Made by a program: the position numbers and the translations under genes. The notes beneath the pieces were generated by a model, which saw only the letters and a program-made list of their open reading frames with translations, did not search any database and was not told the origin of the DNA. From the sequence record PQ471516.1: a DNA stretch of 64,000 bases. One strand, 5' to 3'. Positions 21,129-46,531 of the stretch are shown here, piece by piece; position 1 is the stretch's first letter; each line of letters begins with the position of its first letter.

Positions 21129-24100
21129 ATGTATATCGATGCTTATATGGAACGTAAACGTACTGGTGATATCTTACACGTAGCAGAGCGTAAGAAAGGC
21201 AAACGCATTCTGCGTGAAGTTGACCCAGTATATGAGTATTTTGTAGAGTCGCCACTAGGTACTCATAAAACCGTCTATGGTACAATGGCACAACATCTTG
21301 AGTTCAGTTCTCAATCGCAGATGAACAAGAGTGTTGAGCAGCATAAACTTGAAGGTCTACGTATCTTTGAGAGTGATTGTAACATTACGTTTAAAACCTT
21401 GGCTAAAGAGTACATGGGTAAAGAATCACCAGAACTTAATATTATGTTCTTCGATATCGAGACGGATTTTCATAAGAAGTTTGGTTATGCACCTCCGTCT
21501 GACCCATTCAACCGTGTAACTGCTATTTCTTTGTATCAATCATGGACTGGTAAGGATTATGTACTGACTCTACCACCTGCTGATATGGAATTAGTTGAAG
21601 CACAAGATATTGTAACTCGTTTGAACCAAGAAACTGATGATCCAAACAGCATTGTAATTCTCTATACTGACGAGAAAGATATGTTCATGGAATTCTTCAG
21701 TCTAATGGATGATGCCGATGTAATCTCTGGCTGGAACAGTGAGTTCTTTGATATTCCATACATGATTAACCGTACTCGTAAAATCTTCAATGAAGCGATG
21801 ACGGCTCGTTGGTGCTTGTGGAATAAGAAACCATCACAGCGTGAAGCAGATAACTTTGGAAAAACTGTAATCACATATGATTTGGTTGGTCGTGTTCACC
21901 TTGACTACCTTGCACTGTACAAGAAACACGCAGGACAAGTTGAGCAGTCTTACAAGCTAGATGATATTGCTGAAAAAGTAACTAAAGAGAAGAAAGTAGC
22001 ATATGAAGGTTCATTGGATAAATTATACCGTGAAGACTACATTACTTTCTTACGTTATTCTAAGCAGGATAGTATCTTACTTAAAAAGATTGATGCTAAA
22101 CAGGACTATATCAACCTGCATAACCGACTGGCACATAAAGAGTGCGTACTGATTAGTACTACAATGGGTTCTGTAGCACTGATTGATACTGCTATTATCA
22201 ACCTAGCACACAGTCGTGGTGAAGTAGTTTTCAACAAAGCACCTAAAGAAGACTTTGAAGTAGATCCAGAAATGGAGTACTATGAAGATGAAGAAGGTGA
22301 AGAAGGTGATGAAAAGATTAGTGCAAAAGCTGCTGGTGCATGGGTACAAGATCCAGTACTGGGTATTGTGGATTGGTTAGGATGTACTGACTTTAACTCC
22401 CTATATCCAACCGTATTGCGTACACTAGGCATGAGTACTGAATGTATTATAGGTCAGTTGCGTCAGGATTACACTGAAGCGTATTTGGCTGCTAAGGTAC
22501 AAGAGCAGAAAGCAAAATCTAAATCTAAATCTTTTGAACCAGACTGGACGGCAGCATGGCATGGTCTATTTGCAGCAGTTGAGTTTACAATGGTGCATGA
22601 GAAATCCGAAGAAAACATTATTGTTGATTTGGAAGATGGTAGTTCGTTCAACGCAACTGGTAAAGAACTATATGACATTATCTTTGCAGAAGACAGTACT
22701 ATTGTACTAAGTGCAAACGGAACACTATTTGATAAGACAAAGTATGGTGTAATTCCAGAAATTCTAACTCAATGGTATTCTGAACGTAAAGCACAACAGA
22801 AAATGGTAATCGATTATAAGCATATGTATACTGATGGTTGGGAACTTCCACAACCTGCGACAGTTGAAGAACTTCTAAAGAACTTCACTCCAGGAACTAT
22901 GCATCGTACTAACCTACATGAAGATGATCCAATTTACCTATTACGTCTTGCAATTGTTGCAGAAGAATGGGATAATGTTGCGAAGCTTATTGTAGAGAAT
23001 GGAATTGAATTGAAAGATGGTCGTATCTTCTGTTCTAAAGGGGATAAATCATACTTCAAACAACAAAGTGCATTCTGGAAACAGAACCAACAGATTCGTA
23101 AGATTCTTCTAAACAGTCTGTACGGTGCACTACTGAACAAAGGCTCACGTTTCTTTGATAAGCGTTTAGGTCAGTCTGTAACATTGACTGGTCGTTCCAT
23201 GACTAAACACATGGCAAGCCGCATCAATGAAATCACAACTGGTGTTTACAATCACCAAGGTGGTGTGGTAATATATGGTGATACTGACTCCGTATATTTC
23301 AGTGTAGCTCATTACTTCAAAGAACAAAACATTCCATTCGACTTGACTAAAGAAGAAGTCGTTGATATGTACGTTAAAATTGGTGATGAAGTTGGTGAAT
23401 CATTCCCTGAGTTCATGGACGAGAAATTTAACACTGGTATTGAGAAAGGACGCATTGTTGGTGCAGACCTTGAGATGGTCGGTTCCCGTGGTCTATTCTT
23501 GAAGAAAAAGCGTTATGCTATTCTTAAGTACTGGGAAGATGGTTTCCGTAAAGACATTGATGGACAGCCTGGTGAGATTAAGGCGATGGGTCTTGAAATT
23601 AAACGTTCAGACACACCAAAATACATCCAGAACTTCCTACAGGAGACGCTAATTGCGTTGCTGGTGGGTGAGGATGAAGTCCAGCTAAAACAGCGTGTAC
23701 GTGACTTTAAGAGCGTATTTAAAGACATGCCAGTACACCTTAAGGGTTCACCGAGAACCGTTAAGAACTACACTAACCTAGAAGCGGAATATGCAACTAC
23801 TGGTAAGTGTAAAGTTGGACACGTACTAGCGGGTATCCAATGGAACCGTCTACGTGATGCATTCGAAGACAAGTCTGTACCGGAAGTAACTGATGGTACG
23901 AAAGTTATCGTATGTAACTTGAAAGATAACCCAATGGGTATTAAAGCAGTTGGTTATCCAATCGATTGTGCTGAGTATCTTCCAGAATGGTTCTTAGAAC
24001 TACCATTCGATGAAGAGAAAATGGAAGAAATCGTTCTAACTAAAAAGTTAGATAACATTTTTGGTATTCTTGATATGGATATTGGTATTCACGAGAAGAG

Positions 24101-24137
24101 TACTGCTGCATTGAACAACGGATTTTTCACATGGTAA
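21129..24137 (+). CDS. 43: Family B DNA polymerase gp43
   Basis: ExoI FFDIETD, ExoII GWNSEFFDIPY, motif A DFNSLYP, motif B KILLNSLYG, motif C YGDTDS. Confidence 0.97.
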   Translation: MYIDAYMERKRTGDILHVAERKKGKRILREVDPVYEYFVESPLGTHKTVYGTMAQHLEFSSQSQMNKSVEQHKLEGLRIFESDCNITFKTLAKEYMGKESPELNIMFFDIETDFHKKFGYAPPSDPFNRVTAISLYQSWTGKDYVLTLPPADMELVEAQDIVTRLNQETDDPNSIVILYTDEKDMFMEFFSLMDDADVISGWNSEFFDIPYMINRTRKIFNEAMTARWCLWNKKPSQREADNFGKTVITYDLVGRVHLDYLALYKKHAGQVEQSYKLDDIAEKVTKEKKVAYEGSLDKLYREDYITFLRYSKQDSILLKKIDAKQDYINLHNRLAHKECVLISTTMGSVALIDTAIINLAHSRGEVVFNKAPKEDFEVDPEMEYYEDEEGEEGDEKISAKAAGAWVQDPVLGIVDWLGCTDFNSLYPTVLRTLGMSTECIIGQLRQDYTEAYLAAKVQEQKAKSKSKSFEPDWTAAWHGLFAAVEFTMVHEKSEENIIVDLEDGSSFNATGKELYDIIFAEDSTIVLSANGTLFDKTKYGVIPEILTQWYSERKAQQKMVIDYKHMYTDGWELPQPATVEELLKNFTPGTMHRTNLHEDDPIYLLRLAIVAEEWDNVAKLIVENGIELKDGRIFCSKGDKSYFKQQSAFWKQNQQIRKILLNSLYGALLNKGSRFFDKRLGQSVTLTGRSMTKHMASRINEITTGVYNHQGGVVIYGDTDSVYFSVAHYFKEQNIPFDLTKEEVVDMYVKIGDEVGESFPEFMDEKFNTGIEKGRIVGADLEMVGSRGLFLKKKRYAILKYWEDGFRKDIDGQPGEIKAMGLEIKRSDTPKYIQNFLQETLIALLVGEDEVQLKQRVRDFKSVFKDMPVHLKGSPRTVKNYTNLEAEYATTGKCKVGHVLAGIQWNRLRDAFEDKSVPEVTDGTKVIVCNLKDNPMGIKAVGYPIDCAEYLPEWFLELPFDEEKMEEIVLTKKLDNIFGILDMDIGIHEKSTAALNNGFFTW

Positions 24138-28470: not shown

Positions 28471-33834
<5,364 letters not shown>

Positions 33835-36686: not shown

Positions 36687-37505
36687 ATGTCAAATAAATT
36701 AGATTTCGTTAAAAAGATTTCAGTACTTGATACTGAAACCACTGGTGTTGAAAGTGATGATGATATTATTGAATTTAGTATTTCATTTCCATGTAAAGTA
36801 ACAGAAGATATTGATGGAATTGATAACTACACTTTACGTTATAAACCATTAAAAGATATTCCACCTGAAGCATCGGCAGTGCACTTTATCAGTACTGAAG
36901 ACGTAGCAAACTGCCTGAACTACAGCGATGATTTGGAGAATATTGATGCTCTAATGGGTTGTCGTGATTATTTCGTTGGTCATAATGTTCAGTTTGACCG
37001 TCGAATGATGGTAGATAACGAATATAAATATCGTAACTCTGTATCACAGTATCTATTGGATGAAGAACGTTGGATTTGTACTCTGCGTTTTGCCAAGAAG
37101 ATGTTTGCAGAAGATGTTGAATTCAAGAACTTGACACTGAGTTATTTGTGGTATAAATTTGGATGTTACCGTGAAGTGCATCGTCATGTAAATGCTCACG
37201 CAGCAAAAGATGATGTGTTTATGTGTTATCAAGTACTAATGAAGTTGATTGATATTGCCATTGAGCGTGGACACATTGACGAGTCCGGTGATATTGGAGC
37301 ACAAATCGTAGACTTCTGTAACAAACCTATGCTTTATTCTTGTATGCCATTTGGTAAACACAAAGGTATGAAGATGAGTGAAGTACCACTTAACTACATT
37401 GAGTGGATGATTACGAATAGTGATATTCTAGATACAAGTAATCCAAACTGTGATAAAGATTTAGTATATACATTTGAGTACGAGTATAGTAGTCGTACTA
37501 ACTAA
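36687..37505 (+). CDS. DEDDh 3'-5' exonuclease (ExoX/DnaQ-like)
   Basis: VLDTETTG, GHNVQFD, AHAAKDD, C-terminal MPFGKHKG...Y..W. Confidence 0.9.
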   Translation: MSNKLDFVKKISVLDTETTGVESDDDIIEFSISFPCKVTEDIDGIDNYTLRYKPLKDIPPEASAVHFISTEDVANCLNYSDDLENIDALMGCRDYFVGHNVQFDRRMMVDNEYKYRNSVSQYLLDEERWICTLRFAKKMFAEDVEFKNLTLSYLWYKFGCYREVHRHVNAHAAKDDVFMCYQVLMKLIDIAIERGHIDESGDIGAQIVDFCNKPMLYSCMPFGKHKGMKMSEVPLNYIEWMITNSDILDTSNPNCDKDLVYTFEYEYSSRTN

Positions 37506-40032: not shown

Positions 40033-40878
40033 GTGTTTGATTTCAGTAATGTTAAAAATAAATCAGTTGAAGAAGAAAGTAAACCAACACAACATTCTTT
40101 TGGTATTACTGATATTCTTCAACAGATTGACCGAGCCAACTACAACTATTACAATGAAATGACTGAGAAAGAGCGTAAAGACTTTACGCCTTATACTGTT
40201 CTACGCTGGGTAAGTTCCTTAGATGATTCTCTACAGGTAACTTATCCAAGTTCTAAAGTGGAAAGTGTATTTGGTAAATGGAAAAATGGTGGCAAAGAAG
40301 CACTATCTGAACTCGTTGAAGAGATGAAGAAATCTGGTATCAATGTATCATCAGTTACAAAGTACTGTCATGGTGATTACGATTGGCGTATCAAATTCGC
40401 AGTTCAAGGTCAAGGTGATGCTGCAACTCTAATCAGCAACATGACTGAATTTAACATTACTGGATCACAAATCATTTCCTTAGTGGACAGTGATGTGGTA
40501 AAATACCAACTAATCATGCTGAATGATATGGTGAACGATGGGTTTTGGGATATGAAAGACCACCCTGAGCTTGTATACCAATTGATGTGTTCAGTGCATG
40601 ATATGCTTGGTGGTAAAGAACTACAAAGAAACTGGTTGAACTTCTCTAAGAGTTTCAAACATTCTAATAACGAATTGTTTGCTTTACTAAAGAGTACTCA
40701 ACCAGATAGCATTTCAGCACAAATGAATGAAGACGAATACAAGATTGTTCTCATGCAGTATGATAAGAAATCTTTTGAGGTATTACTAAACAGTATGGGA
40801 TACCAAGACAAAGATGCTAAATCCATGATGAAACTATTCAAAGAAGAATGTAAAAAATATGGCAAAGAAATCAAGTAG
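40033..40878 (+). CDS. Hypothetical protein, possibly clamp-loader small subunit (gp62-like)
   Basis: Y......ERK.F.PY..LRW helical pattern; identity is a weak inference; GTG start after AGGAG. Confidence 0.35.
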   Translation: MFDFSNVKNKSVEEESKPTQHSFGITDILQQIDRANYNYYNEMTEKERKDFTPYTVLRWVSSLDDSLQVTYPSSKVESVFGKWKNGGKEALSELVEEMKKSGINVSSVTKYCHGDYDWRIKFAVQGQGDAATLISNMTEFNITGSQIISLVDSDVVKYQLIMLNDMVNDGFWDMKDHPELVYQLMCSVHDMLGGKELQRNWLNFSKSFKHSNNELFALLKSTQPDSISAQMNEDEYKIVLMQYDKKSFEVLLNSMGYQDKDAKSMMKLFKEECKKYGKEIK

Positions 40879-41569: not shown

Positions 41570-41895
41570 ATAATAAAAGTATATACAATAAAGTACCTGA
41601 AGGGTATGTACCAACCCCAAAGGTTGACAAGAGTAGAGAGATTAGTTTGTTAAGGCAGGGTTCGATTACTGAGATTACACTTGATGGGTCAACCTTTCAA
41701 GTATCTGATCCAGTACGAATTGAAAAGATAATTAAACTTGTTGAAAGACACGATGAGCGATTGTATAATATGAATCAGGAATTATTACAATACAAGCGTG
41801 CGTGTGCACAGTTGGAACAGAAAGTCAACAAACTTTCCGTAACTGTGAATAAATTACAGGAGCAGATTAAGAATGCAGGACTCGACAGGTTCTAA
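41566..41895 (+). CDS. Small coiled-coil protein
   Basis: Heptads in the C-terminal half; coupled at both ends. Confidence 0.65.
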   Translation: MNNKSIYNKVPEGYVPTPKVDKSREISLLRQGSITEITLDGSTFQVSDPVRIEKIIKLVERHDERLYNMNQELLQYKRACAQLEQKVNKLSVTVNKLQEQIKNAGLDRF

Positions 41896-42511
41896 TCATT
41901 ACAGAAAAGCAAGAACTGATATTGACATTGACTTCAAAGATAGTAAGTCAGTGATTGCCATGTTACCTTGCATTAGAAGTACTGAAAAAATTACCGAAGA
42001 TGGATTGATTGCACACAATAGTGGTGTTCATTTTGATAACATCCCAGTTGACCCAATCTCCGGTCTAGCAAGCATTCAATACAAAGAAGCCGAAAGATTG
42101 GGATACCAAAAGGTTGATATCCTGTCACAATCGGCTTATATGTACGTGCGTGACAGAAAACATCTAAAGGAACTTATGAATCGTGAACCAGACTGGAGTC
42201 ACTTATTAGTACCGGAAATTGTTGACAATCTATCACAAATTAAAAAACACATAACGTTACTTAACGTTTGGAAACCGCAAACTATCGACCAACTAGCTAT
42301 GTTTATCGCTATGATTCGACCAGGTAAACGCGAATGCCAAAGTATGAACACATGGTCTGAAGTTGAGGCGGTTATTTGGGATTACAGCACTATCGGTACA
42401 GATCAGAGTGGAAACAAGCTACGCTACTTCAAAAAGCCACATGCTTATGCATATAGCTTAATGATTGTCGTGCAACTTAATGCACTGGTTGAACATCTTA
42501 CTTCTTCTTAA
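41873..42511 (+). CDS. Minimal DnaE-like (family C polymerase) catalytic core
   Basis: TDIDIDF, HNSGV, KVDILS, AMIRPG, FKKPHAYAY match DnaE PDFDVDF, HAGGV, KFDFLG, ALFRPG, FNKSHSAAY. Confidence 0.85.
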   Translation: MQDSTGSNHYRKARTDIDIDFKDSKSVIAMLPCIRSTEKITEDGLIAHNSGVHFDNIPVDPISGLASIQYKEAERLGYQKVDILSQSAYMYVRDRKHLKELMNREPDWSHLLVPEIVDNLSQIKKHITLLNVWKPQTIDQLAMFIAMIRPGKRECQSMNTWSEVEAVIWDYSTIGTDQSGNKLRYFKKPHAYAYSLMIVVQLNALVEHLTSS

Positions 42512-42851
42512 GTGCCACGTTGCGACGCTTAATACGCTTCTGTGGCAAATCACTTAAAGACACAGATGGGCCACATACGAAATTCACCGCTGGGGTATCG
42601 AATCTCTGTGTGTAAGGCTCAAATTTTTCCATTTCTTCTTGGAAAAATAAACATACTGGAATGTTTCTGTTGCTTTGCCACCACCAGTCATGTGCTATGC
42701 TAAGTAATTCGTCTTGCATTGGCTCATTCATGTCATCAAAGGAGTAAAGAGTAGTATACTGTTTACTTTTAATTTTGATAATACCAATGTAAGTTTTGCC
42801 ATCACACTGCACAACAGTAATGAATGGTGGAATAGTATTATATTGATTCAT
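42498..42851 (-). CDS. Hypothetical protein
   Basis: ORF track 42498-42911; ATG 42851 is the more likely start. Confidence 0.65.
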   Translation of the reverse strand: MNQYNTIPPFITVVQCDGKTYIGIIKIKSKQYTTLYSFDDMNEPMQDELLSIAHDWWWQSNRNIPVCLFFQEEMEKFEPYTQRFDTPAVNFVCGPSVSLSDLPQKRIKRRNVALKKK

Positions 42852-42909
42852 ATGAGTTCCATAAATATTAGTATAAATGTTATACCTATTATTTATGGAA
42901 GGAAAAATC

Positions 42910-43887
42910 ATGGCTCATCACGGTGTCTTTATGTACCCTTATAACCAGGAAGTCTCGTTGGGCAATTTTAATATGCCATATAGCAACGAGAAGCTTACTA
43001 TATATCGAGGTGCAAATAATACTTTATCTTTTACAGTACATAATGCTGATGGAAAATATACTCTTTTAAAAGATAATGAATATCTTACTTTTATGATATT
43101 CGATGCACGTAATAATACTAAACTAATTGATATAGTACTTGAAAAAGTTAAACCAAGTTGGCTATCAGAAAGTGGTCAAGCACGTCAAACACTTGGTAAT
43201 AGTAAGAAAGTTTACTATGGATGTATAGTTCCAGCAGGTGTTATCCAAGATACAAGTCCTGGTTCTAAGTATCGCTGGAGTATTACAAAAGTTACAATGG
43301 ATGGTTCTCTGATTGAACCTACGCAGTACTTGTATACTGGTCACAACTATGAAGCATGTGGTGATTTGATTATATCTGATCAAGCTGCTCCAGTATTTGT
43401 ACCAAGTGTTGAAGTGTCAAGAGATAAGAATCCAGCATGGACTTCTATTATGCGTTTGTATCATGAACCGATTGCATCAGGTATGATTGGTGAATTTGAT
43501 ATTCTTGCTTCGTCCCCTCTCCCTGCACAGATGCAGTACGGATTGGTAGATGGCTTAAGTACTCTCGCTATGTATTTTGATAACTTCATTGGACGTATCC
43601 AATTACAAGGGTGTTTATGTAACAACGTACCTACTGATAATGAAAACTATAAATGGTTTATCATTAAATTGGATGGTAAAGATTATATAGAAAATGGTAT
43701 TGATGCTAATGGTTTTGCTAAACCACTAGACGACATACAAGCTTTTAACTTTAAAGGTAACTATATGTGGTTGCGTTTGGTTGTATGTATACATCCAAAG
43801 GTTGAACCTATCCCTTATGACTATGCAGCAGTTAGAAAGATCTACGATCCTCTCTTAACTGTTCCAAAAATTTTGATTCGCAGATGA
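42910..43887 (+). CDS. Probable virion structural protein
   Basis: Late-type cataaata/tataaat at 42860-42878; beta-rich; BppU-like IYRG.NN.L.F.V.N start. Confidence 0.55.
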   Translation: MAHHGVFMYPYNQEVSLGNFNMPYSNEKLTIYRGANNTLSFTVHNADGKYTLLKDNEYLTFMIFDARNNTKLIDIVLEKVKPSWLSESGQARQTLGNSKKVYYGCIVPAGVIQDTSPGSKYRWSITKVTMDGSLIEPTQYLYTGHNYEACGDLIISDQAAPVFVPSVEVSRDKNPAWTSIMRLYHEPIASGMIGEFDILASSPLPAQMQYGLVDGLSTLAMYFDNFIGRIQLQGCLCNNVPTDNENYKWFIIKLDGKDYIENGIDANGFAKPLDDIQAFNFKGNYMWLRLVVCIHPKVEPIPYDYAAVRKIYDPLLTVPKILIRR

Positions 43888-43918: not shown

Positions 43919-44992
43919 GTGAATAAGAATGAGGAATATATCATGAACGCAGTACAAAACATAATGGCACAAATCATGAATGACCCAGTGCCAGGTATTG
44001 GTATGTGGACACATCACAATTGTCCAGTGTGTGTGTTCCGTGGTCATTCCCGTCCCGACACAAAGGGTCGTGGTAATCATATGTTCAACGCTGATGGTTC
44101 AGTGTCGTACAACTGCTTCAACTGTAGTTTAAAAACTGGATGGCAACCAGGAAAATATATGAGCAAAGATATGGAGTCTTTGCTCATTTCTTTTGGAGCA
44201 CAGGATAAAGAAATAGAATTAGCCAAATTCTATATTAAAGAAATGGTTGAAAGTGGTGAGTTTGGTGAAATCGAAACCACAGCAACTAAGTTGTACCAAA
44301 GGGTAACTGTACGTGAACTCCCCCCAACTGCTAAGAAATTGACAGAGTGGGTCACCGAAGATAATATCCCAAATGAGTTTTATAGTGTCCTAAACCATAT
44401 CAACGAACGCAATCCATATTTGTTAGATTTGGATTTGTATTGGTGTCCTTCAAAGGAACATAAGATGTATGATCGTTTTATCATCCCTTATGTTATGAAT
44501 GGTAAAATTGTCGGCTACACAGCTAGACATAAGTTGAAAGACCCAGGAGCTACATATCGTTTTATCAATCAGGTTAGTACTAATATTTTATATAACTATG
44601 ATTTATTACAAGATGACAGAATAAAGACAATTCTGGTTTGTGAAGGTCCATTAGATGCAGCATTAATGGGTGGAGTATCAGCAAACAACTTTAAGTTATC
44701 ATCAGTACAGATTGATGTACTCAAAGCTGCACAGGCTAAGGGTAAGAAGATAGTAGTAGTTCCAGACCGTGATAAGGATGGATTGGTAACAATCGAGCAA
44801 GCCCTTGAGAATGAGTTTTCAGTATCATTTCCAGATTTTGGAACAGTAAGGGAAGGTAGCAATATCCGTCATATTAAAGATTTCGAAGAAGCGTGTGCTC
44901 GTTTTGGTAGATTATTTTGTTTACAACTGATACATGAAAGTACAGTTGACGAACCTTTCTATATTAAAGCACAAACGGATAAGTGGATGTAA
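43919..44992 (+). CDS. 61: DNA primase gp61
   Basis: Zinc finger CPVC...YNCFNC, FIIPY..NG.IVGY.AR, TOPRIM VCEGPLDA and PDRDKDG. Confidence 0.9.
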   Translation: MNKNEEYIMNAVQNIMAQIMNDPVPGIGMWTHHNCPVCVFRGHSRPDTKGRGNHMFNADGSVSYNCFNCSLKTGWQPGKYMSKDMESLLISFGAQDKEIELAKFYIKEMVESGEFGEIETTATKLYQRVTVRELPPTAKKLTEWVTEDNIPNEFYSVLNHINERNPYLLDLDLYWCPSKEHKMYDRFIIPYVMNGKIVGYTARHKLKDPGATYRFINQVSTNILYNYDLLQDDRIKTILVCEGPLDAALMGGVSANNFKLSSVQIDVLKAAQAKGKKIVVVPDRDKDGLVTIEQALENEFSVSFPDFGTVREGSNIRHIKDFEEACARFGRLFCLQLIHESTVDEPFYIKAQTDKWM

Positions 44993-45013
44993 AATGTAAA
45001 TGAGGGAACATAA

Positions 45014-46531
45014 ATGAACCAAAACACAGTGGACGTGAAACAATATGGGATTAACGCACAACAGTACCTATTGTCGCAAGTTTTCAGCAATCCAGATTTG
45101 TATGTTCGTTGTAAGAACATTCTAAAGCCAGAATACTTTGATAATACATTCCGTGAAAGTATTAAGTTTGTTCACGATTATAGTACAAAGTATAGTGCAT
45201 CACCTACACTAAAAGATATTGAAGTGAAAGGTGGTTATCAGTATGATGTATATGAAGTAACTGAACTTCACAAACAATCAGTACTGGATACATGCAGTGA
45301 ATTTTGTCGTCACAAAGCACTTGCATTAGCAGTTGAAAAAGGTATGGAATTAGTACACCAGAAAAAATATGGTGGTATTGAAGAACTAATTCGTGAAGCA
45401 ATGTTGGTATCAGTACAGAACGAGTTAGGTCTGGATGTATTTGAAAATCCAGAAGATACCATTCGTTCATTGAGTACTATGCAAGGTTCCTTTAAGAGTG
45501 GTTGGGAAACTCTTGATTATAAATTATTTGGTGGTTTTGGTCGCCGTGAACTTGAAATTTTCGCTGCTGCTTCCGGTGGTGGTAAGTCAGTTGTTCTTCA
45601 AAACCTAGCAGTGAACTTTGCTAAATCTGGTTTGAATGGTGCATACATTTCACTAGAACTAGCAGAAGAGTTGGTTGCAGTACGTATCTATGGTATGATG
45701 ACTGAATCTAAACTAAGTAACGTAAAACAAGATGCAACTAACATTGGTTTGCAAGTACAGGTTGAAGGTAAAAACAGCGGTGTACTACGTATCAAGCGTT
45801 TACCTGAATCTGTTTCAACTACTGATGATATCGAAAGCTATCTTCGTGAACTACAAATTAAGCTTGAGATTAAGCTTGACTATGTTTGCGTGGACTACCT
45901 TGACTTGTTAACATCAAATCGTTTGGGTTCAAATGACCAATCGAATGCATTCGTAAAAGATAAGTTTGTATCTGAAGAACTGCGTGCACTTGCAACTAAA
46001 CTTGACCTAACAGTATTCACTGCATCACAGTTTAACCGTGGCGGTATTAGTGAAGATAAGAAAAGTCAAAGTCAGATTGCTGGTGGTATTTCTAAGATCT
46101 ATACCGCAGATAACGTAATTTACATTGAAGCACGTAAAGAACTAGGTGAGATGTGGTTTGACTTCCAGAAAACACGTAACAGTAGTGCAGTGGGTTCTCG
46201 TTTGCGTATGTCTTATGACATGGACTCACTACGAGTACTAGATCATGCAACTACCGTACAGCAAATGGAAATGGAAGGAAGTGGCTTTAAACACAGCGGT
46301 AACTGCCGTGTTGGTGGTGGGATGGTATCACCCCCTAATGCTATGCAAACATTGCGTCATCAGCTTTCTAATGCATCTAGTACTACATCAGAAACTATTC
46401 CTGCAACCACAACACTAAATAGTGTTAGTGAGCAAGTTTCCACCAATGAGCCGGAAACAGTGAAACCACAAGAACACGCAGGTAATGACCGTGTTAATGC
46501 TATGAAGCAATGGTTGAATCAAAGGAAATAA
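45014..46531 (+). CDS. 41: Replicative helicase gp41 (DnaB-like) with disordered C-terminal tail
   Basis: Walker A AASGGGKS, YISLEL, VCVDYLDL, TASQFNR, KTR. Confidence 0.92.
   Translation: MNQNTVDVKQYGINAQQYLLSQVFSNPDLYVRCKNILKPEYFDNTFRESIKFVHDYSTKYSASPTLKDIEVKGGYQYDVYEVTELHKQSVLDTCSEFCRHKALALAVEKGMELVHQKKYGGIEELIREAMLVSVQNELGLDVFENPEDTIRSLSTMQGSFKSGWETLDYKLFGGFGRRELEIFAAASGGGKSVVLQNLAVNFAKSGLNGAYISLELAEELVAVRIYGMMTESKLSNVKQDATNIGLQVQVEGKNSGVLRIKRLPESVSTTDDIESYLRELQIKLEIKLDYVCVDYLDLLTSNRLGSNDQSNAFVKDKFVSEELRALATKLDLTVFTASQFNRGGISEDKKSQSQIAGGISKIYTADNVIYIEARKELGEMWFDFQKTRNSSAVGSRLRMSYDMDSLRVLDHATTVQQMEMEGSGFKHSGNCRVGGGMVSPPNAMQTLRHQLSNASSTTSETIPATTTLNSVSEQVSTNEPETVKPQEHAGNDRVNAMKQWLNQRK

What the first reader, a model, noticed from the sequence alone, without database searches (positions are those of the whole stretch)
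41873..42511. A 212-aa minimal family C (DnaE) polymerase with intact catalytic aspartates
Known: DnaE is over 1000 aa with catalytic D401, D403 and D555 (E. coli). Seen: DIDID and KVD keep all three, with HNSGV, AMIRPG and FKKPHAYAY in correct order, but PHP, most of the thumb and fingers, the clamp-binding, OB and C-terminal domains are gone. The phage already has a full gp43 and a full TOPRIM primase. Inference: not a replicase but a repurposed Pol-beta-fold nucleotidyltransferase (primer synthesis or extension, protein priming, end tailing, DNA/RNA modification or anti-defence nucleotide synthesis). Such fragments may have been noted in jumbo-phage surveys, but I know of no demonstrated function.
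Basis: partly seen in the sequence, partly recalled or inferred. Interest (0 to 1): 0.75.

Follow-up and report, generated by a model that had tools for sequence, protein, structure and literature searches.

The report
Half of a split mini-DnaE polymerase
This 212-aa jumbo-phage gene is a real, strongly conserved relative of the bacterial replicative polymerase DnaE, but it is only the C-terminal half of a two-gene "minimal Pol III alpha" that was already described computationally in 2021 and whose activity has never been tested.

Summary
The ORF (41873-42511, +, 212 aa) and all quoted motifs are there. The window is Escherichia phage Turkey5, a 121Q/RaK2-like jumbo phage, where the gene is already annotated "DNA polymerase III alpha subunit". 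DnaE homology is real: a family profile reaches only Pol III alpha chains in the PDB, and a confident AlphaFold model matches only Pol III alpha. The acidic and basic motifs are about 98-100% conserved in 216 homologues, and dN/dS is 0.02-0.07.

The protein is not a complete enzyme. It starts at the D-x-D-x-D strand and lacks the Gly-Ser phosphate-binding half of the Pol-beta palm. A separate 172-aa gene supplies that half. It lies 30 kb downstream, outside the window, and scores above Pfam PF07733's threshold with a 100% conserved G-R-G-S-S motif.

The two genes co-occur (96 vs 97 phage records) and sit in separate conserved replication neighbourhoods. Rare metagenomic proteins fuse them end to end, and a model of one fusion matches only DnaE/PolC (E = 5e-8). 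No PHP, clamp-binding or OB piece exists in the genome.

Iyer et al. 2021 (PMC7824862) described exactly this split minimal Pol III alpha. So the finding is real and already known, the stand-alone reading is wrong, and the function is still untested.

The parts
41873..42511 (+). C-terminal unit of the split minimal Pol III alpha (212 aa; GenBank XMR01866.1). It carries the metal-binding aspartates and a shortened fingers/template-binding region.
   Evidence: ORF; PHROG 11778 full length, E=2e-102; annotation; family profile reaches only DnaE in the PDB; AF2 pLDDT 92.8 and Foldseek top 11 hits all Pol III alpha.
41918..41932 (+). Codons for D16-I-D18-I-D20, the beta strand carrying the two catalytic aspartates (aligned with E. 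coli D401 and D403) plus a third conserved Asp (D405).
   Evidence: Alignment to 2hnh_A; 98-99% conserved in 216 homologues; strand E17-21 in the model.
42110..42118 (+). Codons for K80-V-D82, the strand carrying the third catalytic aspartate.
   Evidence: Aligned with the K-M-D of M. tuberculosis DnaE1; K80 215/216 and D82 216/216; strand E81-85.
42317..42328 (+). Codons for R149-P150-G151-K152, the fingers 'RPG' motif.
   Evidence: Aligned with the R-P-G of E. coli and M. tuberculosis Pol III alpha; R149 215/216 and P150 216/216.
42428..42454 (+). Codons for F186-K-K-P-H190-A-Y-A-Y194, a fingers motif aligned with E. coli F756..Y764.
   Evidence: alignment; K187 94%, K188 88%, H190 98%, Y194 94%.
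42498..42911 (-). Small convergent gene (137 aa, PHROG 11637, unknown function) overlapping the 3' end of the C-unit. It is a conserved neighbour, not shown to be a functional partner.
   Evidence: Homologues hold the same position in PA5oct, Atu_ph07 and next to the natural fusion gene.
43919..46531 (+). Primase (43919-44992) and DnaB-type helicase (45014-46531), the conserved downstream replication neighbours of the C-unit.
   Evidence: PHROG 47 and PHROG 19, Pfam DnaB_C; same order in PA5oct and Atu_ph07.
21129..24137 (+). Family B (gp43-like) DNA polymerase, 1002 aa: the phage's complete replicative polymerase, listed as context.
   Evidence: Pfam DNA_pol_B_exo1 E=2.6e-22 and DNA_pol_B E=1.1e-21; annotation.

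Best explanation
The ORF encodes the C-terminal subunit of a two-subunit, minimal family C (DnaE-type) polymerase core found in 121Q/RaK2/PA5oct/Atu_ph07-like jumbo phages.

Shown: it keeps the metal-binding strand (D16, D18), the third aspartate (D82) and the fingers motifs (R149-P-G, K187/K188-x-H190). It lacks everything N-terminal to the D-x-D strand. A separate 172-aa gene (XMR01905.1, Turkey5 record 258884-259402) lies 30.4 kb downstream and about 8.9 kb beyond the window end. It encodes exactly the missing segment, equivalent to E. coli alpha residues ~318-394 with the G-R-G-S phosphate-binding loop.

Inferred: the two proteins assemble non-covalently into one Pol-beta-type palm plus short fingers, roughly E. 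coli alpha 318-~770. A beta-hairpin replaces the thumb, and there is no PHP, clamp-binding or OB domain. The assembly would catalyse two-metal nucleotidyl transfer on a DNA template.

More weakly inferred: it acts as an auxiliary, low-processivity DNA polymerase (gap filling, repair or primer extension) beside the T4-type replisome, because each half is embedded in a conserved replication-gene neighbourhood.
For: Homology to DnaE:
- The C-unit profile hits only two PDB sequences, both DnaE, in four collinear stretches.
- The N+C profile hits 9 PDB sequences, all Pol III alpha, at E=2.6e-8 to 2.2e-6.
- For the C-unit model (pLDDT 92.8), the top 11 Foldseek PDB hits are all Pol III alpha.

Missing half and partner:
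- Homologues start at M-P-D-I-D-I-D.
- The partner gene matches PF07733 at 35.6 bits against a cutoff of 23.9, profile positions 16-95, and matches PHROG 11127 at full length.
- G-R-G-S-S is 100% conserved in 113 N-units.
- A local hmmsearch of all Turkey5 segments finds exactly two pieces, covering profile positions 3-164 and 159-357.

Partnership:
- The C-unit is in 96 phage records and the N-unit in 97, with matching genus counts. Both are present in every divergent lineage listed.
- Natural fusions P0179/P0270/P0271/P0264 carry PHROG 11127 then PHROG 11778 end to end, with one PF07733 hit crossing the junction.
- In alignment A4 the N-units end about 10 residues before the C-units begin.
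- The fusion model has pLDDT 89.9 and pTM 0.86. It matches 16 PDB chains at E<=1.2e-4, all DnaE or PolC, with the next hit at E=3.8. In the viral library every named hit at E<=0.001 is phage DnaE/Pol III alpha.

Selection: dN/dS is 0.02-0.07.

Context: C-unit, small reverse gene, virion protein, primase, helicase; and N-unit, small ORF, co-chaperonin, clamp loader. Both orders are conserved in Turkey5, PA5oct and Atu_ph07.

Literature: the same conclusion is in PMC7824862, section 3.4.1.
Against: - There is no direct evidence that the two Turkey5 proteins bind each other. The joint model is of a metagenomic fusion protein, not of the Turkey5 pair.
- Fusions are rare (4 seen among 563 representatives) and come from short contigs.
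- Pfam does not recognise the C-unit. Its own PDB profile E-values are marginal (0.026 and 0.067). TM-scores are only about 0.4-0.56.
- With no thumb or clamp-binding element, it is unclear how primer-template DNA is held.
- Substrate (dNTP or NTP, templated or not) and biological role are untested anywhere in the literature I could search.
Confidence: 0.8

Rival explanations
1. One reading: the 212-aa protein is a self-sufficient, repurposed Pol-beta-fold nucleotidyltransferase (primer synthesis, tailing, protein priming, modification or signalling-nucleotide synthesis) that works without other DnaE parts.
For: Catalytic aspartates and basic motifs are near-invariant. Purifying selection is strong. 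The model folds confidently on its own.
Against: The polypeptide begins at the D-x-D strand, and some homologues have only two residues before it. The Gly-Ser phosphate-binding loop and its helices, which are part of every Pol-beta-type palm including DnaE (aligned at E. coli G363-S364), are therefore absent. That segment is a separate, co-occurring gene and is fused to the C-unit in some phages. Both genes lie among replication genes, not defence or modification genes.
Confidence: 0.05
2. The two halves are joined after translation by a split intein, as in cyanobacterial DnaE, giving one covalent polypeptide.
For: Two distant genes encode consecutive parts of a DnaE-like protein. This resembles the cyanobacterial split dnaE arrangement (established knowledge, not tested here).
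Against: There is no room for intein halves. N-units end at the conserved E-F-L-K, aligned with the fusion's continuous sequence. C-units start 0-15 residues before the D-x-D strand. No Pfam intein or Hint domain was reported for either protein.
Confidence: 0.02
3. The two-subunit core is catalytically active but is not a templated DNA polymerase. It could be, for example, a template-independent or RNA-synthesising nucleotidyltransferase that has kept the DnaE scaffold.
For: The thumb, clamp-binding, OB and PHP domains that serve processive DNA replication are all missing. The phage already has a complete family B replicase with clamp and clamp loader.
Against: The fingers motifs that align with DnaE's R-P-G and K-x-H motifs are conserved as strongly as the aspartates. 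All structural neighbours are templated DNA polymerases. The genes sit beside primase/helicase and clamp loader.
Confidence: 0.1
4. The protein is a non-catalytic remnant, a pseudoenzyme or structural protein kept for another reason such as virion association.
For: Its neighbours on both sides are annotated as virion structural proteins. GAP32 annotators called it a membrane protein.
Against: The putative active-site residues are 98-100% conserved down to 27% identity, which is not expected of a pseudoenzyme. In PA5oct the neighbouring gene carries the virion mass-spectrometry note and the C-unit homologue does not. No record annotates it as structural from evidence.
Confidence: 0.03

Closest known systems
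Split minimal DNA polymerase III alpha of group 2.2 jumbo phages (Iyer, Anantharaman, Krishnan, Burroughs, Aravind 2021, Viruses 13:63; PMC7824862)
   Same: This is that system. It consists of two distantly encoded proteins, an N-terminal NTP-binding unit and a C-terminal Mg2+/template-binding unit. It sits in 121Q/RaK2/Atu_ph07-type phages beside a family B polymerase, with no other Pol III domains. All of this was re-derived here independently.
   Different: Nothing essential differs. Added here: natural fusion proteins as direct evidence of partnership; residue-level mapping to E. coli alpha; conservation counts; dN/dS; the two conserved neighbourhoods; and a whole-genome check that only two pieces exist.
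Bacterial DnaE / Pol III alpha (E. coli, T. aquaticus, M. tuberculosis; PDB 2hnh, 2hpi, 3e0d, 4iqj, 5lew, 7pu7)
   Same: Pol-beta-type palm with a G-R-G-S loop, a D-x-D strand and a third Asp; fingers R-P-G and K-x-H motifs in the same order. It is the only structural neighbour class in the PDB.
   Different: About 384 aa in two chains against about 1160 aa in one. There is no PHP, no helical thumb (a beta-hairpin of ~55 aa takes its place), and no beta-clamp-binding, OB or tau-binding region. Sequence identity is only 11-19%.
PolC of Firmicutes (PDB 3f2b, 3f2c)
   Same: Same family C catalytic core; matched by the fusion model at E=6e-5 to 1e-4.
   Different: PolC has an inserted proofreading exonuclease and a different domain order. 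It matches more weakly than DnaE.
Other split or shortened phage DnaE proteins (e.g. Pseudomonas phage PA5, 466 aa + 569 aa; Mycobacterium phage Fowlmouth DnaE-like, 463 aa)
   Same: Phage-encoded family C polymerases divided into more than one gene product.
   Different: Those pieces are much larger and were not examined here. Whether they are split at the same point is unknown.
Cyanobacterial split-intein DnaE (established knowledge, not fetched)
   Same: Two distant genes encode consecutive parts of DnaE.
   Different: There are no intein halves here. The split point lies inside the palm, just before the D-x-D strand, and the products are expected to stay separate.

Membership tests
Family C DNA polymerase catalytic core (DnaE/PolC) | Two catalytic aspartates on one beta strand (E. 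coli D401, D403) plus a third aspartate on a later strand (E. coli D555) | tested here: met
   D16/D18 align with D401/D403. K80-x-D82 aligns with the K-M-D of M. tuberculosis DnaE1. Conservation is 99-100% in 216 homologues. Mapping of D82 to E. coli D555 rests on collinearity, not on a printed E. coli alignment.
Family C DNA polymerase catalytic core (DnaE/PolC) | Gly-Ser phosphate-binding loop and helices N-terminal to the D-x-D strand, in the same polypeptide | tested here: not met
   Absent from the 212-aa ORF; homologues can start two residues before the D-x-D. It is present in the separate 172-aa gene XMR01905.1, where G-R-G-S aligns with E. coli G361-S364 and is 100% conserved.
Family C DNA polymerase catalytic core (DnaE/PolC) | Pfam PF07733 (DNA_pol3_alpha) above the gathering score | tested here: not met
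   The ORF has no Pfam hit at E<=0.1. The feature is met by the partner N-unit (35.6 bits against 23.9) and by the natural fusions (59.6 bits).
Family C DNA polymerase catalytic core (DnaE/PolC) | Fold similarity to solved Pol III alpha / PolC structures | tested here: met
   C-unit model: top 11 PDB hits are all Pol III alpha, seven at probability 0.99-1.00. Fusion model: 16 hits at E<=1.2e-4, all DnaE or PolC, then a gap to E=3.8.
Family C DNA polymerase catalytic core (DnaE/PolC) | PHP domain, beta-clamp-binding motif, OB fold and C-terminal tau-binding domain of full-length DnaE | tested here: not met
   The ORF ends about 20 residues after the motif aligned with E. coli 756-767. Only two DnaE-like pieces occur in Turkey5 bases 1-347000. 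No PHP annotation exists in the record. PMC7824862 states the same.
Family C DNA polymerase catalytic core (DnaE/PolC) | Templated DNA polymerase activity | not testable with these tools
   No experimental report was found.
Split minimal Pol III alpha of group 2.2 jumbo phages (PMC7824862) | [quoted passage not shown] | tested here: met
   N-unit covers profile positions 3-164 and C-unit covers 159-357; PHROG 11127 and PHROG 11778.
Split minimal Pol III alpha of group 2.2 jumbo phages (PMC7824862) | The two genes are distantly located | tested here: met
   30.4 kb apart in Turkey5 and 14-182 kb apart in seven other lineages.
Split minimal Pol III alpha of group 2.2 jumbo phages (PMC7824862) | Host genome is a group 2.2 jumbo phage with a classic family B polymerase and a T4-type replisome | tested here: met
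   Turkey5 is 351 kb and 121Q-like. Family B polymerase, clamp, RFC-like loader, primase, DnaB and gp32-like SSB are present.
Stand-alone Pol-beta superfamily nucleotidyltransferases (CCA-adding, cGAS/MNT-type) | Gly-Ser loop and acidic strand in one small polypeptide forming a complete active site | tested here: not met
   The Gly-Ser half is missing from the ORF. No structural match to such enzymes appears above noise.

The most novel reading that the evidence does not exclude
The two-chain mini Pol III alpha is a working second DNA polymerase that cooperates with the family B replicase at a T4-type fork, for example by extending primers or filling gaps on one strand. That would make these phages a natural mixed B+C-family replisome, and would make the enzyme the smallest known family C polymerase core, possibly resembling the ancestral form as Iyer et al. 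suggest. My evidence does not exclude this. It also cannot distinguish it from a repair-only or non-DNA role.
Probability: 0.3. Interest if true: 0.65.

Novelty: already known. Interest (0 to 1): 0.3.

Why it matters
For this scan, the point is that the finding is genuine but not new. GenBank already calls both genes "DNA polymerase III alpha subunit", a 2017 genome paper noticed the truncated N-unit, and a 2021 survey described the split minimal enzyme. More broadly, a ~384-aa, two-chain family C polymerase core remains uncharacterised. It lacks PHP, thumb and clamp-binding parts, it is conserved in hundreds of jumbo-phage lineages, and it is under strong purifying selection. It would define the minimum needed for DnaE-type catalysis.

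Tried and rejected
- Single-sequence searches of the ORF against Pfam and the PDB gave nothing meaningful. Only profiles and structure showed the DnaE link.
- tblastn of the fusion proteins' N-terminal parts against the window found nothing. The partner lies outside the window and was found by reading the annotation of the whole Turkey5 record.
- The search for homologous proteins with the N-part of P0179 returned only three fusion clusters.
- Alignments A2 and A3 are mis-threaded. MAFFT stretched the N-unit tails over C-unit columns, helped by a chance resemblance between the N-unit tail and the C-unit K-x-D region. I did not use them. I tested subsets locally and used A4.
- The annotation 'sliding-clamp-loader small subunit' for window 40033-40878 could not be confirmed by Pfam or PDB sequence search.
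- The PA5oct omics paper and the 2026 jumbo-phage review hold no statement about this protein.
- I rejected the split-intein, pseudoenzyme and stand-alone nucleotidyltransferase readings (see rivals).
None of those letters went into a call or counts as evidence. Every motif comparison in this report comes from tool output.

Full report
1. The observation.
The window is Escherichia phage Turkey5 (PQ471516.1), matched at 100% identity over the tested stretch. Window base 1 is record base 186001. Turkey5 is a 351-kb 121Q/RaK2-like jumbo phage. The ORF at 41873-42511 (+) exists and is 212 aa long. GenBank already names it 'DNA polymerase III alpha subunit' (XMR01866.1). It matches PHROG 11778 ('DNA polymerase') over its full length at E=2e-102. 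Pfam and a single-sequence PDB search find nothing.

2. Is the DnaE likeness real?
Yes, and four independent lines agree.
- Family size. There are 371 clusters at 90% identity, and 563 representatives at 50% identity score E<=0.001. Nearly all are 190-220 aa.
- Profile search. A 32-sequence profile reaches only two PDB sequences, both M. tuberculosis DnaE1. E-values are marginal (0.026 and 0.067), but four collinear stretches cover the D-x-D-x-D, K-x-D, R-P-G and K-x-H-A motifs.
- Structure. The AlphaFold2 model is confident (pLDDT 92.8). Its top 11 Foldseek PDB matches are all Pol III alpha, seven of them at probability 0.99-1.00, and noise follows.
- Conservation. In 216 full-length homologues reaching 27% identity: D16 99%, D18 99%, D20 98%, K80 215/216, D82 216/216, R149 215/216, P150 216/216, H190 98%. 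Pairwise dN/dS against 121Q, A4 and RaK2 is 0.02-0.07, with synonymous sites near saturation.

Several homologues begin M-P-D-I-D-I-D, so nothing precedes the metal-binding strand. A Pol-beta-type palm also needs the Gly-Ser phosphate-binding loop and its helices upstream of that strand. Two longer representatives showed where that part is.
- P0179 (375 aa) and P0264 (336 aa) carry a G-R/S-G-S segment directly upstream of the D-x-D-x-D block.
- P0179 matches PHROG 11127 at residues 8-180, then PHROG 11778 at 190-374.
- One Pfam PF07733 hit (59.6 bits) runs across that junction.

4. The partner gene.
Reading the annotation of the whole Turkey5 record showed a second 'DNA polymerase III alpha subunit' CDS. 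This is XMR01905.1, at record 258884-259402 (+), 172 aa.
- It lies 30.4 kb downstream of our gene and about 8.9 kb beyond the window end.
- It matches PF07733 above the gathering score (35.6 against 23.9 bits, profile positions 16-95).
- It matches PHROG 11127 over its full length (E=1e-82) and contains G-L-G-R-G-S-S.
- Its family has 289 clusters of about 172 aa, nearly all with PF07733. G-R-G-S-S is 100% conserved in 113 members.
- A local hmmsearch with the N+C profile against all 1929 stop-to-stop segments of Turkey5 bases 1-347000 returns exactly two hits. The N-unit covers profile positions 3-164 and the C-unit covers 159-357. Nothing else scores even at E<=10.

5. Do the halves belong together?
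- Co-occurrence. The C-unit is in 96 phage records and the N-unit in 97, with matching genus counts (Escherichia 34/34, Pseudomonas 11/11, Salmonella 8/8, Erwinia 8/8, Xanthomonas 4/4, Yersinia 4/4). Both are present in every divergent lineage listed: PA5oct, Atu_ph07, SCTP-2, XacN1 and CM1. They are always separate genes, 14-182 kb apart.
- Junction. In alignment A4, stand-alone N-units end at E-F-L-K exactly where the fusions continue. Stand-alone C-units begin about 10 residues later.
- Combined profile. The A4 profile reaches 9 PDB sequences, all Pol III alpha, at E=2.6e-8 to 2.2e-6. The printed alignment to E. coli alpha (2hnh_A, residues 318-421) puts G-R-G-S on G361-S364 and D16/D18/D20 on D401/D403/D405. 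Further stretches put R-P-G on the E. coli R-P-G near residue 640 and K188/H190/Y194 on K758/H760/Y764.
- Fusion model. The model of the natural fusion P0179 is a single confident body (pLDDT 89.9, pTM 0.86). It matches 16 PDB chains at E<=1.2e-4, all DnaE or PolC, with the best at 5e-8 and the next hit at E=3.8. In the viral structure library every named hit at E<=0.001 is a phage DnaE/Pol III alpha.
- Thumb. Between the D-x-D strand and the K-x-D strand the models show a short helix, a beta-hairpin and another helix, about 55 residues in all. DnaE has its helical thumb there.

6. Context.
The C-unit is followed by a small convergent gene, a virion protein, the primase and a DnaB-type helicase. 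This order is conserved in PA5oct and Atu_ph07. The fusion gene of contig L008 sits in this same kind of neighbourhood.

The N-unit is followed by a small ORF, a GroES/gp31-like co-chaperonin and the RFC-like clamp-loader ATPase. This order holds in Turkey5, in Atu_ph07 (where gp312 is annotated as the clamp loader) and, by gene numbering, in CBB. In PA5oct the gene at that position is unannotated (PMC5259590).

The split is therefore old, and each half is anchored in its own replication module. In PA5oct the neighbouring gene carries a virion mass-spectrometry note and the C-unit homologue does not. The phage's main replicase is a complete family B polymerase at window 21129-24137.

7. Literature.
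- Buttimer et al. 2017 noted a 172-aa 'truncated' Pol III alpha in phage CBB.
- Attai et al. 2018 listed it for Atu_ph07.
- Iyer et al. [quoted passage not shown] They proposed cooperation with the family B enzyme or a role in repair.
- I found no experimental work on it.

8. Mechanism and confidence.
Shown:
- The ORF is the C-terminal, metal-binding and fingers half of a family C polymerase core.
- The complementary Gly-Ser half is a separate gene.
- The two co-occur and are fused in some phages.
- No other DnaE domains are present.

Inferred:
- The two products form a non-covalent heterodimer with one complete Pol-beta-type active site (confidence about 0.8).
- That heterodimer is a templated DNA polymerase (about 0.6).
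- It acts as an auxiliary enzyme at or near the T4-type replisome (about 0.3-0.4).

Rejected or unlikely: the stand-alone repurposed nucleotidyltransferase, split-intein ligation, and a pseudoenzyme.

9. Verdict.
The finding is real and the gene is under strong selection, but it is already described and annotated. Its 'self-contained minimal polymerase' reading is not, and its own refutation clause is partly met.

All comparisons cited here come from tool output.

Noticed in passing
window 30674-32315 (+): The terminase large subunit is annotated in the Turkey5 record as two adjacent CDSs rather than one (one discontinuity). I did not examine whether this is a real split, a recoding event or an annotation or sequencing matter.
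   Followed up: no
window 36687-37505 (+); L006:17739-18425 (+): The phage has two DnaQ-like 3'-5' exonuclease genes. The one in the window has RNase_T plus a QSregVF_b domain. The other, about 7 kb downstream of the N-unit gene, is Rv2179c-like. Either could supply proofreading to a PHP-less mini Pol III alpha, but nothing links them so far.
   Followed up: partly
L006:9884-12446 (Turkey5 record 258884-261446); L014; L015: The order N-unit, small ORF, GroES/gp31-like co-chaperonin, then RFC-like clamp-loader ATPase is conserved in Turkey5, PA5oct, Atu_ph07 and CBB, at 33-50% protein identity.
   Followed up: partly
window 42498-42911 (-): A small convergent gene (137 aa, PHROG 11637, unknown function) overlaps the 3' end of the C-unit gene by 14 bases. 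It keeps this position in PA5oct, Atu_ph07 and next to the natural fusion gene in L008. Its function is unknown.
   Followed up: partly
L012 (GAP32 record 213274-213924): The GAP32 orthologue of the C-unit is annotated 'putative membrane protein' from a transmembrane prediction. Many other records call it hypothetical. This is probably the hydrophobic C-terminal helix being misread.
   Followed up: no
L007:32035-47731 (Turkey5 record 330035-345731, minus strand): A run of about 13 paralogous genes is annotated as RCC1 / HERC1 / Kelch-like repeat proteins, a large tandem paralogue family.
   Followed up: no
L006:9884-10140 (first ~85 aa of the N-unit); P0179 residues 1-85: The N-terminal third of the N-unit lies outside PF07733. 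It is predicted as a small beta/alpha module with lower confidence (pLDDT 68-84) and has no identified counterpart.
   Followed up: no
BFVD hits A0A1J0MHX4 and A0A1J0MHX0: Pseudomonas phage PA5 carries two 'DNA polymerase III alpha subunit' proteins of 466 and 569 aa, which suggests other, differently split phage DnaE enzymes.
   Followed up: no
window 40033-40878 (+): This gene is annotated 'sliding-clamp-loader small subunit' in Turkey5. It matches only PHROG 11758 (unknown function) and nothing in Pfam or the PDB by sequence, so the annotation is unverified.
   Followed up: partly
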